From Macrostomum lignano (taxonomy: Eukaryota): a stretch of 64,000 nucleotides of DNA. The notes beneath the pieces were generated by a model. It did not search any database, was not told the origin of the DNA, and saw nothing but the letters and a program-made list of their open reading frames with translations. A program made the position numbers and the translations under genes. The number at the start of each line of letters is the position of its first letter. The stretch's first letter is position 1. The stretch lies in assembly GCA_002269645.1 (NCBI GenBank), contig NIVC01000884.1, positions 62,001-126,000 on the forward strand, written 5' to 3'. This document shows, in pieces, positions 1,724 through 19,700 of this stretch.

Positions 1724-4700
1724 ATGAGTCATCGTTTCGACGAGCATGGAGATGGCGGCGGTGGTGGAGGCGGAGGCGGCAGTGACTCTGCGAAGCTGTA
1801 CCGCCAGCATCTTCTTCGGCATCACAGCCATCAGCAGCAACAGCAGCAGCAACGCGCCTCCGCTTTCTTTTTCGCCGAGTTGAACACCGACTTGGCCACC
1901 TACGCGGATCCGGCCGCAATTTCCGACTCCGATCGCCGACTTTGCTGCCACGGATGCTGCGGCATCGGCGGAGGCTACGGAGGTGCCGGCAGGGTCACCG
2001 CGGCGGCGGCAGCAGCCAGCAGCTTCAGCGTGCTGTCCAAGCGACACGCATTCCGCTGGGACCGGAAGCTGCTACTCCGACTGCTGCCGCTGCATTCGAT
2101 CTTCGCCCTAACGATGGCGGCGGCCGAGGCGGCTGCGGTTGCCGCGGCGCCGTCGGCGGCTTCGGCGGTCGAACCCGCAGTCCGCTGCTGCCTGTACACC
2201 ACCACGCTGGCGCTGCTGTGCGGCGCCGCCTGCTTTGTCAGCAGCCGCCGATTTCAGCCGGGCAGCCACGCCGGTGCAGCGGCCGCCCTGGACCTCGCCT
2301 GCGCCGCTCTGATGTCGGTGGCCGCGCTGCCGCTGTCCGCTGCTCGGCCGGCCGCTCTGCCATCGGGCCTCTGGCAGGTGGCGCCGCTGCTGCTGTCTGT
2401 GCTGTGCCTGCTGCCGCTGCCGATTCTCCTGACCGCTGGCTACTGCGTCATGCTGGCCACCGGGTACACCGTCTGCTCCGGCCTGCTGGCTTATCGACGC
2501 TGCGGCGGCGGCAGCGGCGGCGAGACGGCGATGCTTGAGGCCTGCAGGCACCTGCGCGCTCATTTTTGGAATTCGGTAGGTAGCCGTGCGTCACGGGTGT
2601 CATCCCAAATTGGTACCCTGTTTTTCGGAGTCTTGGTTAGAGCGTCGGAATCACCACTGAAAGGTCGGGGCTTCGATTCTCGACCCGCTCGAAACAATTT
2701 GTGTCCTGGAGCAAGACACTTAACCCTGCATTGCTTCAGTTCATCCAGCTGTAAAATGGGTGCCAGCATTAGCTGGGTAATCAGGGGGTTAAGCTTTGTT
2801 ACTAGAAACATGAGGCTCTCGGTTACTAACTATTTTGGGTGTCAAGTTGTTTCTTAGAAATTAGTAATTTAAGATAGAGCTGTTTCTTAGAAATCAATAA
2901 TTCAAGATAGACCTGTTTCTTAGAAATCGTTAGTTTAAGATAGAGCTGTTTCTTAGAAATTAATCATTTAAGATAGAGCTGTTTCTTAGAAATCGATAAT
3001 TAAAGATAGACCTGTTTCTTAGAAATCGTTAATTTAAGATAGAGCTGTTTCTTAGAAATTTATCATCTAAGATAGAGCTGTTTCTTAGAAATCGATAATT
3101 AAAGATAGACCTGTTTCTTAGAAATCGTTAATTTAAGATAGACCTGTTTCTTAGAAATCGATAATTAAAGATAGACCTGTTTCTTAGAAATTAATAATTT
3201 AAGATAGACCTGTTTCTAAGAAATTGATTAATAAAATGGTTTTGGGTAATTATTGAATCAGTTCCAATAATAATAAATCTGTTATTTTAATATGGGCTTT
3301 GGGCTCAACAATTAGTCTGTAGTTATCGATCTGTTAATTTGCACTTCCGTTTGTTGCCTATGTGTAATTTTTATAACCTGTTAGTTTTTAAGCCTTGGCA
3401 GCTTTTCTAGTTGGTGCCACCCAAGTTCACAGATTTAATGTAGAGCTATTTATCATATAATAGTCAGTTATATAAAATTGTACTCACAGAACTCTTTCAA
3501 TTTCCCCTTCCCCCACCCATCCATCAGTTAGTTTTAAAATGGACACATCTACTTTATTAGACAGCTGATCTGGGATTTGGGGAGAATCGGGGAAGCGCAA
3601 TTGCGCAGGCTGCAAGTCGGTTCCGCGCTGCACCCATATTTCTACCCTCACAAGCTCTCCGATCGGCCCTCTCTGTCTGACTGTCGGCATGAGATAGATA
3701 GGACAGACAGGGGGAAATGAGGATTTCTGGTTAAGGGAGAATTGCAATAGAAATTCAGAGCACCGAGATCTGGCTGGTCCAGCATGTATCGATGCTGTGC
3801 TGCAGTTCTGTAGTGGGCCTTCGCTACGTTAAAATAGTTGGGGATTTGGATAGGGGAAAGGGAGAGAGACCGGCCAGCACTGTGCGCCTCTGGGAAGCGA
3901 GTTTTTCTGCATGCGTTGCCGCTCTGCATATCAGCATGACCTTGTCGCGGATTCATGTTATAAATGGGTGGCCTCACTCACACGGAGTGCAAGACATGCA
4001 ATCTGCATCTATATATGACATTATGAAGATATCTAGAATTTTAGGATTGGAAAGCGTTGGAAGTCTGGCCTTGTACTATCAATTTTTTGTATTTTTTCGA
4101 ATTGACGAAGACTAAACGATTTCTCGCGTTTTTGAATCGTTTTTAAATGAAATCCCGAACTTTCTTGTATCTCTTCTCACTCTCCTGCCTCTCTATCACT
4201 ATCGTGTCTCTCCCTCTCACTTTCCTGTCTCTCCCTCTCACTCTCCTGTCTCTCCCTCTCACTCTCCTGTCTCTCCCTCTCACTCTCCTGTCTCTCCCTC
4301 TCACTCTCCTGTCTCTCCCTCTCACTCTCCTGTCTCTCCCTCTCACTCTCCTGTCTTTCCGTTTCACTCTCCTGTCCCTCCGTCTCACTCTCCTGTCTCT
4401 CCCTCTCACTCTCCTGTCCCTCCCTCTCACTCTCCTGTCTCTCCCTCTCACTCTCCTGTCTCTCCCTGTCACTCTCCTGTCTCTCCCTCTCACTCTCCTG
4501 TCTCTCCCTCTCACTCTCCTGTCTCTCCCTCTCACTCTCCTGTCTCTCCCTGTCACTCTCCTGTCTCTCCCTCTCACTCTCCTGCCTCTCTCTCACTATC
4601 GTGTCTCTCCCTCTCACTCTCCTGTCTTTCCGTTTCACTCTCCTGTCCCTCCGTCTCACTTTCCTGTCTCTCCCTCTCACTCTCCTGTCTCTCCCTGTCA

Positions 4701-16700: not shown

Positions 16701-19700
16701 TCCCCCAACGTACATTGCAACTGTACATTTCAATGCTGAAGAATTCTCTTCCCCAACGTACATTGCAAATGTACATTTCAATGCGGAATAATTCTCTTAC
16801 CCAACGTACATTGCAAGCGTACATTTCAATGCTGAAGAATTCTCTTACCCAACGTACATTGCAAGTGTACATCTGGAATGTAAGGACTCAGGAGTCAGGC
16901 AGTGTTAAGGGCGTGCGAGAAAAAGGCCTTAACCCTCCAAGTAGGGTGAGACAATATTTGTATATTTGGAAGCGATCTGATTGCAACGTGCACAAGAGCC
17001 GCGTGCCATACGTACATAAGTTGGGTAGCGACATGTACTTGCTAATACAATGTACAAGCTAGCACTGGCCAGAGTGGCATTACATGGAATCCGGAAGAAT
17101 TCTCTTCCCCAACGTACATTGCAAATGTACATGTTAGAATCTTGAAAAACCGAACCCCCAGCATTCCCTGTGCGTGGAGGAGCACCCCCTCATCGCGGTG
17201 CTCCATATCGGCCTCAGCGTTGCTTCGGACGAGGCCGTTTCCGCCTCGCCGAACTCTGCCGCCCTCACCGGCCACTCCGGCCGCTGCCTGGCCAACCTGA
17301 CGGCTCTCATCGACGAGCTGCTCGACCATCAGCAGCAGCAGCAGCATCAGCACCAGCCGACTTCATCAACAGGCGACATCGTCAAGATCCGCTGCACCGG
17401 CCGGGTCTCCGTCCGCTTGGCCGTCGGCCTCAACCGCCGCCTGCGCGACACGCCGGCCAGCAAGCTGTTCCACCTCGCCCAGCTGCTGCAGTTCGCCTGC
17501 CGGCTTCGTCGGCGACTGCCGAGCAACTGCGGCAACGGCTGCCGGCTGCGGCTGAGGATGGGCGCCCATCTGGGCTCCGGATTCACCGCGCTGGTTGGCT
17601 CCGTCAGACCTGTGAGCTGCGTGCTGTGTATTTGATATTGGTTGCTGGGGTAGATCAGGTTGTTAACACCTAATTGCTAGGGCAATCTAGTAACTTAGTT
17701 CTCTCGTTATTAGGGTAAACATTGCTTGGACTTTGTTGCTAAGTTAAGCATATCTGCTACACATTTATAAATGGTTGTTGTTAGGGTAAATATTTAGCTT
17801 TTACCCTTTTTCTATGGGTACGAGTATGGTTGCTAGGGTAGGATTGCTAGGGTGAATATGGTTGCTAAGGTGCAGTTGCTATGGTATAGTTACTAGGGTG
17901 ATTATGTTTGCTAAGGTACGGTTGCTATGGTATGGTTACTATGGTGATTATGGTTATAGTTGCTAAGGTGAAAATGGGTTGCTAAGGTATGGAATTGCTA
18001 GGGTGTGGTTGCTATGGGAAAATGATTGCTAGGGTAGGATTGCTAGGGTGAATATGGTTGCTAAGGTGGTTGCTATGGTATAGTTACCAGGGTGATTATG
18101 TTTGCTAAGGTGCGGTTGCTATGGTCTGGTTAATATGGTGATTATGGTTGCTAAGGTATAGTTAATAGGGTGAATATGATTGCAAAGGTATAAAATTGCT
18201 AGTGTGTGGCTGCTAGGGTTCATAACTAAAATGAACTACGTTGTCTTTGCTAAGCTAAACATATGGTTGCTAAGGTCTATAAGGTTGCTAGAGTTGCTAT
18301 TGCCATGCTGTCGTTGCTAAGCGTCGTTGATAAACATATTCCGAGGTGCTAATGTACTTTTGTTACTCTTAATCAGGTTTTCGACCTCTGGGGCGAGGCG
18401 GCCCGCGTGGCGGACGCGCTGGCCGGGGCGGGCGGTCCCGGACAGCTGCTCGTGTCCGAGCCGGTGCACTCCTTGGCCAGGCAGCAGTTTGACTTCGCAC
18501 CGCACCCGGCCGTCTGGCTGGACGGCGCCCGATGGCCGGCCATGGCGCTGCGGGATCAGGCGAGTGGATGAAGAGGGAATATTTGTAAATTCCGGACGAA
18601 AATCTTAACAAAAAATCGTCGTAAAATTGTTATGGAATATTTCTTTAGAAATATCCCATTTGAGGATATTCCCAGAAATATCTTATTGGGGAATTTCCCA
18701 GAAATATCTCATTGGAGATTTTCCCAGAAATATACCATTAGAGGCACAGAATATATTCTGTGATTGGAGGGGAATTTCCCAGAAGTATACCATTGGGGGA
18801 ATTTCTCAGGAAATGTGCAATTTGGGGGGCTATTTCACACGAAATATCCCATCCGCGAATTTTTAGCACGAAGCGAAGCGAAGATCATTCTGAGATCTCC
18901 CATTGCTAACCAGCCCTAATCTCACGGATTATCCCATTCCAGCCGGCCCCCGCTCACCAGAGGCCGCAGCTGCACCCACAGCTGAGGCAGCTACACCAGC
19001 AGAACCGGCTCAGCGCGCCGTGCTGTCCGCAGCCTTCGATGCAGCTTCAGCAGCACCACCAGCTTCAGCAGCACCAGCTGCTCAATCAGCGACGTCCTCC
19101 CGGCAACCGCGGCCGCAGGCGGGACAGCCGCGTTCACAGCGTCGTCCGTCCGGTGGCGGGGCTGCCGACCAGCCCGCTGCTGCCGCTCCAGCCGCTGCCG
19201 CCTCCGCCACCGCCGCCGCCACCGTTGCCGCGGTCGACCAGCATTGACCATCGAGCTGGCAGCGAAGCCGGCGCCGACCGATTCGACTTTCCCGCCTATC
19301 GCCGACCGAGCAGCCCGCCCCCTTCGACGGTGGTCGATCGCATTGTCGCCTCCTCGCTGGAGCCGCCGCAGCTGCCGGTGGCGCCGCCGCCGCCGCTGCC
19401 TTCGTCGCCGCCGCTGCCGCAGGCGCCTCCGCAGGACGACGGCGGCGACGATTCTATCGTCGTGTCGCTGATGTCGCTGACCGTGGCGGACGACGACGAG
19501 GTCGACAACGACGACGAAGAAGTCGAGGAGGTCGAAGAGGCCGCCGAACGACTCCGAATGATGCGACCGGTCGACGAGACCTCGATGGCGGCGATGCAGC
19601 AAAGCGGCGACAGCGACTATCTCGGCGCCTTTGTCAGCGACCTCGAGGAGGATGGCGACGGCGGCGGCAGCGGCAGCCTCGGCCTGGCTGCGGTGGAGGC

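What the first reader, a model, noticed from the sequence alone, without database searches (positions are those of the whole stretch)
1724..18559. Intact 12-TM adenylyl cyclase homolog with a dismantled active site (candidate pseudo-cyclase receptor or regulator)
Seen: the gene keeps canonical splice sites, the M1-C1-M2-C2 layout and the fold motifs, but the catalytic positions differ. The C1 first metal-binding Asp (ILFADIxGF) reads VVSACIDGL (D to C, codon at ~7043). The C2 adenine-selecting Lys (EKIKTIG) reads VKIRCTG (K to R). The transition-state Asn/Arg of DIWGNTVNVASRM reads [13 protein letters not shown] (N to R, R to A). The pyrophosphate-binding VKGKG motif is absent. Only the second metal Asp (GDTY) and the FDLWG Asp remain. 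The reciprocal site is not rescued either: C2 has IAVLHIGL and C1 has [10 protein letters not shown]. Established: mammalian class III ACs need these residues for catalysis. Inference: this is a retained pseudoenzyme that could act as a G-protein sink or scaffold, a dominant-negative heterodimer partner, or a membrane receptor signalling through its long tail.
Basis: partly seen in the sequence, partly recalled or inferred. Interest (0 to 1): 0.82.

Follow-up and report, generated by a model that had tools for sequence, protein, structure and literature searches.

The report
Flatworm adenylyl cyclase homolog, dead active site
This flatworm (Macrostomum lignano) gene encodes a membrane adenylyl-cyclase look-alike that keeps the enzyme's fold but has lost most residues needed to make cAMP, so it is probably a non-catalytic relative; whether it is expressed and useful is untested.

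Summary
Window 1724-18571 (+) carries a 13-14 exon gene of Macrostomum lignano, all core introns GT-AG. It encodes a 1191-1215 aa protein with M1-C1-M2-C2 order, two Guanylate_cyc domains (100.8 bits) and both helical transducer segments. Its best solved relatives are ADCY5 and ADCY8.

- C1: first metal Asp is Cys (TGC 7043-45); second metal Asp kept.
- C2: Lys to Arg, Asn to Arg, Arg to Ala, KGKG Lys to Asp; adenine Asp kept.
- The reciprocal site is also dead.
- The invariant fold glycines are kept in both domains.
- No alternative cyclase exons exist in the window.

A long-diverged, still open gene argues against an old pseudogene. However, I found no ortholog outside M. lignano among 1.84 billion representatives, no transcript evidence and no dN/dS.

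The model has three soft spots:
- a probable frame switch in the C1b linker (about 11930-11960);
- a weak, phase-constrained acceptor for the TM9 micro-exon;
- an uncertain C-terminus, either stop at 18569 or a GC-AG splice to a roughly 445 aa tail.

The proposed roles (G-protein sink, dominant-negative partner, receptor) are inference. Verdict: a likely natural pseudo-tmAC, a new variant of a known kind, of moderate interest.

The parts
1724..2575 (+). Exon 1: start codon, low-complexity N-terminus (poly-G, poly-Q), hydrophobic segments TM1-TM5 of M1
   Evidence: First ATG after an in-frame stop; donor TCG|GTAGGT; five hydrophobic peaks; matches P0002 and P0003
4991..5140 (+). Exon 2: TM6 and start of the helical (transducer) segment
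   Evidence: Acceptor ...CCAAACAG|CTT, donor TTG|GTGAGC; aligned to the ADCY5 post-TM6 helix
6203..6318 (+). Exon 3: cyclase-transducer motif [17 protein letters not shown] and the lead-in to C1
   Evidence: Acceptor TTTCCTCAG|GAC, donor GC|GTAAGC, phase 2; aligned to ADCY5 'erlllsvlprhvamemk'
7030..7144 (+). Exon 4: C1 beta1 [12 protein letters not shown]; first metal-binding Asp replaced by Cys (TGC 7043-7045)
   Evidence: Acceptor TTTGCAG|A, donor CTG|GTGAGC; Cys aligned to Asp of ADCY5/8 'ilfaDi'; profile position 29, Asp in 74% of domains, is Cys here
10342..10472 (+). Exon 5: C1 ...[15 protein letters not shown]; second metal Asp retained (GAC 10375-77)
   Evidence: profile positions 72 Gly, 73 Asp, 75 Tyr, 80 Gly and 82 Pro are all kept
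10899..11057 (+). Exon 6: C1 [16 protein letters not shown]...[14 protein letters not shown]; the Arg of RVGI and the fold glycines are kept; positions equivalent to Asn and Arg are Asp and Ala
   Evidence: best exon hit of the cyclase-domain HMM scan (E = 2e-9)
11730..12164 (+). Exon 7: end of C1 ([12 protein letters not shown]) and the C1b linker. The frame is uncertain after about 11950. Alternative: donor at 12133 joined to acceptor at 13469
   Evidence: Acceptor CTCTCAG|C; weak donor GGG|GTTGGT. Codon-usage score favours f0 up to about 11950 and f2 from about 11955 to 12180
13467..13659 (+). Exon 8: end of the linker and the pre-M2 motif [15 protein letters not shown]
   Evidence: Acceptor CCTTTCAG|A (tandem NAGNAG), donor GAG|GTGGGT; aligned to ADCY5 'flltfrepdlekky'
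14009..14191 (+). Exon 9: TM7-TM8
   Evidence: Acceptor CACTACAG|TTT, donor AAG|GTCTGA; hydrophobic peaks at residues 725-771
14508..14579 (+). Probable micro-exon 9b ([24 protein letters not shown]): the otherwise missing TM9
   Evidence: Donor GTG|GTGAGC. The in-phase acceptor AAAAG|TCC is weak. The stronger CCCAG at 14517 is out of phase and would give a stop. Strong coding score in f2, +0.89. Present in UniRef model P0005
15173..15643 (+). Exon 10: extracellular loop with NAT sites, TM10-TM12, start of the second helical segment ([10 protein letters not shown])
   Evidence: Acceptor CCTCCCCAG|CTC, donor CAG|GTGAGC; aligned to ADCY5 903-1010
16435..16560 (+). Exon 11: second cyclase-transducer motif ([16 protein letters not shown])
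   Evidence: Acceptor AATTCAG|ACT, donor CTG|GTAATT; aligned to ADCY5 'rllhnilpkdvaahfl'
17162..17611 (+). Exon 12: first part of C2: IAVLHIGL (no Asp), poly-Q insert, VKIRCTGR (Lys to Arg, CGC 17390-92; no Asp), [11 protein letters not shown]
   Evidence: Acceptor ACCCCCAG|CAT, donor CCT|GTGAGC; alignments
18377..18571 (+). Exon 13: second part of C2: [14 protein letters not shown] (Asp kept; Asn to Arg 18404-06; Arg to Ala 18416-18), LDGAR in place of VKGKG. In-frame stop TGA at 18569-71, or GC donor CAG|GCGAGT after 18559
   Evidence: Acceptor CTTAATCAG|GTT; alignments; HMM hit E = 2e-6
18943..19773 (+). Possible exon 14: proline-, glutamine- and acid-rich tail of 277 codons. It joins only if the GC donor at 18560 is used; otherwise it is a separate downstream gene (ATG at 19039)
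   Evidence: Acceptor CCATTCCAG|CCG in phase 0, donor ATG|GTGAGT, frame f0 open throughout; coding score positive at both ends and ambiguous in the poly-Pro middle; no Pfam domain; no database homolog
20151..20657 (+). Possible exon 15: Ser/Asp/Arg-rich C-terminal tail; its last about 80 nt may be in another frame
   Evidence: Acceptor AAAGCAG|CCT in phase 0; frame scores are mixed

Best explanation
The locus encodes a Macrostomum-lineage, very divergent paralogue of the class IIIa transmembrane adenylyl cyclases (ADCY1-9 type).

WHAT IT KEEPS. The product has the whole signalling chassis: two membrane bundles, both helical cyclase-transducer segments and two cyclase-homology domains. These domains retain the fold-defining glycines and hydrophobic core, so they should still form the C1-C2 head-to-tail dimer.

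WHAT IT HAS LOST. In the one interface that could be productive, five of the seven canonical catalytic residues are replaced:
- C1 Asp (metal A/B) to Cys;
- C2 adenine Lys to Arg;
- transition-state Asn to Arg and Arg to Ala;
- gamma-phosphate Lys to Asp.
The pseudo-symmetric second interface has none of the seven.

CONSEQUENCE. The protein is therefore predicted not to make cAMP by the two-metal mechanism. It most likely acts, if expressed, as a non-catalytic tmAC-like membrane protein.

PREFERRED MECHANISM (inference). It associates with catalytically competent tmACs and/or their regulators through the membrane and helical domains. It thereby damps or relocates cAMP production, as truncated inactive AC3 and AC8 isoforms do in mammals.

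SHOWN VERSUS INFERRED. Shown: gene structure, domain architecture, residue substitutions, retention of fold residues, absence of rescuing exons. Inferred: loss of activity, expression, selection and partner binding.
For: - Two PF00211 domains at 100.8 bits.
- Colinear alignment to ADCY5 (E = 2e-20) and ADCY8, including both transducer helices and parts of M1 and M2.
- Residue-by-residue substitutions appear in the alignments and in the 203-domain profile. Positions conserved in at least 90% of domains (L49, D57, G72, G80, G119, G123, G131, G141, A147) are kept, while D29, K69, N145, R149 and K184 are replaced.
- 0 in-frame stops in 1042 codons, against 26 and 10 out of frame. The in-frame codon-usage signal is like that of the neighbouring UDPGP-like exon.
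- All core introns are GT-AG.
- The nearest non-self relatives are only 24-31% identical. The divergence is therefore old, yet the reading frame and fold survive.
- No alternative cyclase-like exon exists in the 64 kb window.
- A single Asp-to-Ala change at the corresponding site inactivates AC6, while cAMP-independent effects persist (PMC5540275).
- Inactive truncated AC3 and AC8 bind and sequester active ACs (PMC11971047).
Against: - No expression evidence could be obtained. No transcript-derived protein matched any part of the gene.
- No ortholog outside M. lignano was found, so purifying selection is untested and fast relaxed evolution is possible.
- There is a probable frame switch in the exon 7 linker.
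- The only in-phase acceptor for the TM9 micro-exon is weak.
- The C-terminus is uncertain.
- The coding sequence contains low-complexity expansions.
- The genome is a recent hidden polyploid with redundant copies, which favours decay of individual copies.
- The Arg now sitting one helical turn before the lost Arg could partly substitute for it, so inactivity is a prediction and not a fact.
Confidence: 0.5

Rival explanations
1. This copy is a decaying pseudogene. An already divergent cyclase paralogue was duplicated in the recent M. lignano genome duplication, and this copy is now drifting. On this reading the frame switch in exon 7 and the out-of-phase acceptor of the TM9 micro-exon are real lesions, and no functional protein is made from this locus.
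For: - The best coding frame changes from f0 to f2 near 11930-11960.
- The strongest acceptor for exon 9b gives a premature stop.
- Other M. lignano models of the same gene (P0004, P0005, P0006) mix reading frames.
- No published model covers exon 13.
- The genome is highly redundant.
- No ortholog was found elsewhere.
Against: - There are no stop codons in 1042 confidently placed codons, and all core splice sites are canonical.
- Frame f0 stays open through exon 7, and an in-phase donor exists, so a full-length ORF is still translatable.
- The PacBio-based assemblies of this genome could introduce single-base indels; this expectation about long-read error is my own knowledge, not a statement in that paper. 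The frame-mixed UniRef models would fit such errors.
- The catalytic losses and deep divergence predate any recent duplication, so the ancestral gene survived a long time without canonical catalysis.
Confidence: 0.25
2. It is an active but non-canonical nucleotide cyclase. The Arg at the Asn position lies one helical turn before the lost Arg and would take over transition-state stabilisation. Cys plus the retained Asp would bind a softer metal such as Mn2+, and Arg would replace Lys in base recognition.
For: - The second metal Asp, the Arg of RVGI and the adenine-binding Asp are retained.
- The i/i+4 geometry on helix alpha4 is an inference from known AC structures.
- The abstract of a pseudoenzyme review states that catalytic residues can migrate (PMC10211241, listed).
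Against: - Five of seven catalytic positions are changed at once, including the Lys of KGKG to Asp.
- A single Asp-to-Ala change at the first metal site is enough to inactivate AC6.
- Cys is a poor Mg2+ ligand (general chemistry).
- No active class III cyclase with this combination appears among the 203 domains profiled.
Confidence: 0.1
3. It is a gene-model artefact. On this reading the apparently dead motifs come from mis-joined exons or a chimeric assembly, and the real transcript uses other exons with canonical motifs.
For: - The model was built by hand without RNA data.
- Every intron is filled with tandem repeats that complicate assembly.
Against: - The substituted residues lie inside long exons that align without gaps to ADCY5 and ADCY8, not at junctions.
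- P0003 gives the same exon 1-4 junctions, and P0001 gives the exon 1-2 and exon 4-6 junctions but drops most of exon 3.
- An HMM scan of every open fragment on both strands of the window found only exons 4, 5, 6, 12 and 13.
Confidence: 0.03

Closest known systems
Mammalian transmembrane adenylyl cyclases ADCY5 and ADCY8 (PDB 8sl3, 8buz)
   Same: - M1-C1-M2-C2 order.
- Both helical transducer segments, two cyclase-homology domains and the pre-M2 motif are present.
- The alignment is colinear over most of the length.
   Different: - Overall similarity is very low (E = 2e-20 for about 1200 aa).
- The first metal Asp, the adenine Lys, the Asn-Arg pair and the KGKG Lys are all replaced.
- C2 carries a poly-Q insert.
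- There may be a roughly 445 aa low-complexity tail.
Engineered AC6 D426A ('AC6mut')
   Same: - It is a full-length tmAC in which replacement of a catalytic-core Asp abolishes catalysis.
- It still has cAMP-independent cellular effects (PMC5540275).
   Different: - AC6mut is a laboratory point mutant with every other residue intact.
- The flatworm protein is a natural gene with multiple substitutions in both domains.
Truncated inactive isoforms AC3-AT and N-terminally truncated AC8
   Same: They are natural, catalytically inactive tmAC products that bind active ACs, hold them in the ER and lower cAMP (PMC11971047). This is the functional model I favour.
   Different: - Those are isoforms of active genes that lack part of the protein.
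- Here a separate gene keeps the full architecture and has lost the chemistry.
- Interaction with active ACs is untested.
The degenerate (forskolin-binding) second site of all tmAC C1-C2 dimers
   Same: It is a pseudo-symmetric nucleotide pocket that has lost its catalytic residues while the fold is kept (established knowledge of AC structures).
   Different: - In ordinary tmACs one of the two sites stays active.
- Here both sites are degenerate.
Mycobacterial Cya / Rv1625c (PDB 5o5k, 4p2m, 1yk9)
   Same: - These give the best single-domain matches to C1, including the helical domain (54 bits).
- They are also class IIIa.
   Different: - They are 6TM, single-domain, homodimeric and active.
- They carry all the catalytic residues.

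Membership tests
Class IIIa transmembrane adenylyl cyclase (ADCY1-9 type) | Two cyclase-homology domains (Pfam PF00211) in one polypeptide | tested here: met
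   100.8 bits with 2 stretches; C1 48.6 bits and C2 41.1 bits separately
Class IIIa transmembrane adenylyl cyclase (ADCY1-9 type) | Two six-helix membrane domains in the order M1-C1-M2-C2 | tested here: inconclusive
   The order is confirmed. M1 has six hydrophobic segments. M2 has five, plus a sixth only if micro-exon 14508-14579 is spliced in.
Class IIIa transmembrane adenylyl cyclase (ADCY1-9 type) | Helical cyclase-transducer segment before each catalytic domain | tested here: met
   [17 protein letters not shown] and [16 protein letters not shown] align to the ADCY5/8 segments 'erlllsvlprhvamemk' and 'rllhnilpkdvaahfl'
Class IIIa transmembrane adenylyl cyclase (ADCY1-9 type) | Canonical catalytic set: two metal Asp (C1); adenine Lys and Asp, transition-state Asn and Arg, gamma-phosphate Lys (C2) | tested here: not met
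   Only the second Asp (C1) and the adenine Asp (C2) are kept. The others are Cys, Arg, Arg, Ala and Asp. The reciprocal site has none.
Class IIIa transmembrane adenylyl cyclase (ADCY1-9 type) | ATP to cAMP activity, stimulated by Gs-alpha or forskolin | not testable with these tools
   Needs a biochemical assay
Pseudoenzyme (retained, non-catalytic homolog of an enzyme) | Enzyme fold retained | tested here: met
   Profile positions conserved in at least 90% of 203 cyclase domains are kept in 9 of 10 positions (C1) and 7 of 8 aligned positions (C2).
Pseudoenzyme (retained, non-catalytic homolog of an enzyme) | Key catalytic residues missing | tested here: met
Pseudoenzyme (retained, non-catalytic homolog of an enzyme) | Expressed and under purifying selection | not testable with these tools
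   No transcripts or orthologous DNA were retrievable. The only indirect evidence is the open frame and old divergence.
Pseudogene | Disabling lesions (stops, frameshifts, lost splice sites) | tested here: inconclusive
   No stops and all introns GT-AG. However, there is a probable frame switch in exon 7 and an out-of-phase strong acceptor at exon 9b. These cannot be told apart from assembly indels.

The most novel reading that the evidence does not exclude
This would be the first natural, full-length 12-TM 'pseudo-adenylyl cyclase' of an animal. It is a separate gene whose C1-C2 dimer has lost catalysis in both pockets. It keeps the membrane bundles, both transducer helices, one metal Asp, the phosphate Arg and the adenine Asp. 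It could therefore work as a nucleotide- or ligand-sensing scaffold, or as a dominant-negative partner that tunes cAMP output of active cyclases, possibly signalling through a long disordered tail.
Probability: 0.35. Interest if true: 0.6.

Novelty: new variant of a known kind. Interest (0 to 1): 0.4.

Why it matters
Membrane adenylyl cyclases are usually viewed only as cAMP generators, and the role of their large membrane domains and transducer helices is still debated. Suppose evolution has kept the whole chassis while discarding the chemistry. That would be direct evidence for catalysis-independent functions of the chassis, such as scaffolding, partner sequestration or ligand sensing.

It would also offer a genetically tractable test, because M. 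lignano has RNAi and transgenesis. So far, catalysis-independent effects have been seen only with engineered mutants (AC6 D426A) or truncated isoforms (AC3-AT, AC8).

If instead the gene is silent or decaying, it is simply one more casualty of the recent genome duplication in this flatworm.

Tried and rejected
I used UniRef fragment P0001 (TM4-C1) instead, so only C1 was searched exhaustively.
- The look-up of encoding contigs for P0004 and P0001 gave no record. No paralogous DNA was available, so dN/dS was not possible.
- Word-indexed searches with E2-E7, E8-E13 and E13 plus tail returned only M. lignano UniRef fragments or nothing. No transcript-derived proteins were found.
- I looked for a second copy of the gene in the window. 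None exists.
- I looked for alternative or mutually exclusive cyclase exons on both strands. None exists.
- I considered a short intron to explain the f0 to f2 switch in exon 7. No usable GT...AG pair exists there.
- I considered exon 9 joining the strong CCCAG acceptor at 14517. This gives an immediate stop in this sequence.
- A search for poly(A) signals after exon 13 and after exon 15 found none, which is uninformative.
- The UniRef names 'Protein kinase domain-containing' (P0004, P0006) and 'AC_N domain-containing' (P0003, P0005) have no Pfam support in my scans.
- Literature searches for a named natural pseudo-tmAC found none in the held library. This is not proof of absence.
- No structure was predicted, because the tool only accepts unspliced window translations or database proteins.

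Full report
WHAT THE WINDOW IS. The sequence is eukaryotic: GC-rich exons are separated by introns packed with micro- and minisatellites. A draft translation of the cyclase-like pieces hit only UniRef proteins of the flatworm Macrostomum lignano. These were 69-86% identical over spliced fragments and 100% identical in single exons. P0003 is identical over 193 residues to my exons 1-4. The window is therefore M. lignano genomic DNA. This genome is more than half repetitive, was assembled from PacBio reads, is recently duplicated, and has 38.8% of its genes trans-spliced (PMC5730564; PMC12869490 and PMC10468722).

GENE MODEL. I read every junction on the DNA.
- The core gene has 13 exons between 1724 and 18571 on the + strand. 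Every intron is GT-AG, most with good GTRAG donors and pyrimidine-rich acceptors.
- A 72-nt micro-exon (14508-14579) is very probably a fourteenth exon. It encodes a hydrophobic helix, has a perfect GTGAGC donor and the strongest coding score of any segment (+0.89). It is also present in UniRef model P0005.
- The product is 1191 aa without the micro-exon and 1215 aa with it.
- In 1042 codons of confidently placed exons there is no stop, against 26 and 10 stops in the two other frames.
- Its end (18559) is the last base before a GC dinucleotide, not the stop codon.

ARCHITECTURE.
- Pfam finds two Guanylate_cyc domains, 100.8 bits in total (individually 48.6 and 41.1 bits).
- Against all PDB sequences the best matches are full-length ADCY5 (8sl3, E = 2e-20) and ADCY8 (8buz). 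The alignments are colinear. They cover part of M1, TM6, the first helical transducer segment, C1, the pre-M2 motif, TM10-12, the second transducer segment and C2.
- A hydropathy scan gives six segments in M1 and five in M2. The micro-exon supplies the sixth.
- The gene is thus a bona fide relative of class IIIa tmACs in layout.

ACTIVE SITE. I name residues by the usual reference numbering, from my own knowledge of the AC5 C1 / AC2 C2 structures: C1 D396, D440 and R484; C2 K938, D1018, N1025, R1029 and K1065.
- In the HMMER alignments, '[11 protein letters not shown]' lies on 'vsilfaDiegf' (D396 to Cys).
- 'sfdgDtylv' lies on 'kilgDcyyc' (D440 kept).
- 'lRvgi' lies on 'mRvgi' (R484 kept).
- 'ivkiRctgr' lies on 'lekiKtigs' (K938 to Arg).
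- '[14 protein letters not shown]' lies on 'yDiwgntvNvasRm' (D1018 kept, N1025 to Arg, R1029 to Ala).

PROFILE CHECK. I then built a profile from 203 cyclase domains taken from the 149 best library hits, and aligned C1 and C2 to it.
- Positions conserved in at least 90% of domains are kept in C1 at 9 of 10 positions: L49, D57, G72, G80, G119, G123, G131, G141 and A147. Only G128 is changed.
- They are kept in the aligned part of C2 at 7 of 8 positions.
- R117 (89% conserved) is kept in both domains.
- The catalytic positions are changed as follows: D29 is Cys in C1. D73 is Asp in C1 and Arg in C2. K69 is Arg in C2 and Ser in C1. D138 is Asp in C2 and Gly in C1. N145 is Arg in C2 and Asp in C1. 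R149 is Ala in both. K184 is Asp in C2.
- The productive C1-C2 pocket therefore keeps two of seven canonical residues, and the reciprocal pocket keeps none.

It is the opposite of what uniform neutral decay would give. An Asp-to-Ala change in the catalytic core of AC6 (position 426) is enough to inactivate that enzyme (PMC5540275).

COULD OTHER EXONS RESCUE IT? An HMM of cyclase domains was run against every stop-to-stop fragment of at least 15 aa on both strands of the whole 64 kb. It hit only exons 6, 13, 5, 4 and 12 of the model, and nothing else above noise. There is also no second copy of the gene in the window.

HOW ISOLATED IS IT? I searched 1.84 billion representative proteins exhaustively with the UniRef fragment P0001, which covers TM4-6 and C1. 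The spliced model itself was not accepted.
- The search returned P0002 (the same gene, 1e-133).
- It returned P0006 (1e-18), which on inspection is a frame-scrambled model of another M. lignano copy.
- Everything else was at E of 1e-14 or worse and 24-31% identity. These were chytrid, Diphylleia, amoebozoan and environmental cyclases.
- No flatworm or other animal ortholog stands out.
- No database protein matches exon 13 or the putative tail at all.
The gene is therefore lineage-restricted and fast-evolving, and its divergence from active cyclases is old.

FUNCTIONAL PSEUDOENZYME OR PSEUDOGENE? For retention:
- The divergence is old, yet the frame is open across 13-14 exons.
- The splice sites are canonical and the structural residues are kept.
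- GC3 is 0.55-0.89 in the core exons, where the window as a whole is about 0.36-0.57 GC per 2 kb.
- The in-frame codon-usage signal is comparable to that of the unrelated UDPGP-like exon at 58.4-58.9 kb.

Against retention, or at least unresolved:
- Codon-usage scoring shows that in exon 7 the coding frame is f0 up to about 11950 and f2 from about 11955 to 12180. Frame f0 stays open and has an in-phase donor, although a weak one (GTTGGT at 12165). Frame f2 has its own solution, with donor GTGACG at 12133 joined to the second AG of a tandem acceptor at 13469. A one-base indel in the C1b linker is therefore likely, and I cannot say whether it is real or an assembly error.
- The best acceptor for the TM9 micro-exon (CCCAG at 14517) is out of phase and would give an immediate stop. 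Only a weak AAG acceptor at 14507 keeps the frame.
- The other UniRef models of this gene (P0004, P0005, P0006) mix frames. This fits either indel-rich assemblies or decaying duplicates.
- No RNA evidence or orthologous DNA was retrievable, so expression and dN/dS remain untested.

C-TERMINUS. Read straight through, exon 13 ends nine bases after 18559 at TGA (18569-71). However, 18557-18565 reads CAG|GCGAGT. This matches the donor consensus at every position except the T of GT, as in typical GC-AG introns.
- Splicing there to the acceptor at 18942 is in phase. It opens a 277-codon exon ending in a perfect ATG|GTGAGT donor, followed by a further in-phase exon (20151-20657).
- The tail of about 445 residues is rich in Pro, Gln and acidic residues. 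It has no Pfam domain and no homolog.
- It may equally be a separate downstream gene, possibly trans-spliced, starting at ATG 19039. The 'long tail' is therefore possible but unproven.

MOST LIKELY MECHANISM. I favour a non-catalytic tmAC-like membrane protein (confidence about 0.5). The retained membrane bundles and both transducer helices are the parts that mediate AC dimerisation and couple the membrane domain to the catalytic dimer (PMC5699072, listed, for the helical domain). Natural inactive AC3 and AC8 isoforms bind active cyclases, hold them in the ER and lower cAMP (PMC11971047). The simplest working model is a dominant-negative or scaffolding partner of active cyclases. Nucleotide binding without turnover is also conceivable, because one metal Asp, the phosphate Arg and the adenine Asp remain.

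RIVALS.
- A decaying duplicate copy (0.25).
- An atypical but active cyclase in which the Arg one helical turn upstream replaces the lost Arg (0.10).
- A model artefact (0.03).

COMPARISON WITH WHAT IS KNOWN. The protein passes the architectural tests for class IIIa tmACs and fails the catalytic-residue test. It should therefore be called a tmAC homolog, not an adenylyl cyclase. In four searches of the held literature I found engineered dead ACs and truncated inactive isoforms, but no named natural full-length pseudo-tmAC gene. That is a limited search and not proof of absence.

VERDICT. This is a new variant of a known kind. Interest is moderate (0.4), because the key biological claims of expression, constraint, inactivity and partners are all still open.

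Noticed in passing
window 2848-3232, 4175-4789, 5178-6036, 6331-6741, 7277-9201, 9772-10316, 10517-10848, 12211-13260, 13669-13951, 14219-14377, 14611-15110, 15715-16164, 16597-16872, 17829-18157: Every intron of the gene is largely filled by a different tandem repeat. Examples are (AGAC)n of 1.9 kb, (TAGT)n of 0.86 kb, (ATCT)n, and a 16-mer repeated 66 times. The exons are repeat-free islands.
   Followed up: partly
window about 52800-58400: An array of about 5.6 kb of imperfect CTGT/CTGC-type microsatellite with AT skew near -0.98. It gives artefactual ORFs of more than 1000 aa on both strands.
   Followed up: no
window about 58420-58926 (+): This is an exon of an unrelated gene with a UDPGP (UTP-glucose-1-phosphate / UDP-GlcNAc pyrophosphorylase) match, 31.4 bits. 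It starts right after the microsatellite array. Its codon usage resembles that of the cyclase-like gene.
   Followed up: partly
window 18943-19773 and 20151-20657 (+): Two well-bounded, in-phase, low-complexity coding-like exons lie downstream of the cyclase domains. They have no Pfam domain and no homolog in 5.8 billion proteins. They are either a tail joined by a GC-AG intron or an orphan downstream gene.
   Followed up: partly
window 11930-11960 (exon 7) and 14009-14050 (exon 9): The codon-usage frame changes within exon 7. In addition, UniRef model P0005, from another copy, changes frame inside exon 9 right after 'IAMA' at an AA/AAA run. This suggests homopolymer-length differences between copies or assemblies.
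   Followed up: partly
UniRef proteins P0003, P0004, P0005, P0006 (other models of this gene): Their source names are 'Protein kinase domain-containing protein' and 'AC_N domain-containing protein'. Pfam scans give no support for either name, and the models are frame-scrambled fragments.
   Followed up: yes
window 32439-32882 (+), 37070-37543 (+), 41607-42101 (+): Further ORFs that look like exons of other genes. One has an Ig-like 'YTCVFRN' motif and an EGF-like Cys pattern; two are Gln- and Pro-rich. None has a Pfam hit.
   Followed up: partly
window 13464-13468: A tandem NAGNAG acceptor (CAGAG) lies at the start of exon 8. It allows two reading-phase solutions, matching the two candidate donors of exon 7.
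   Followed up: partly
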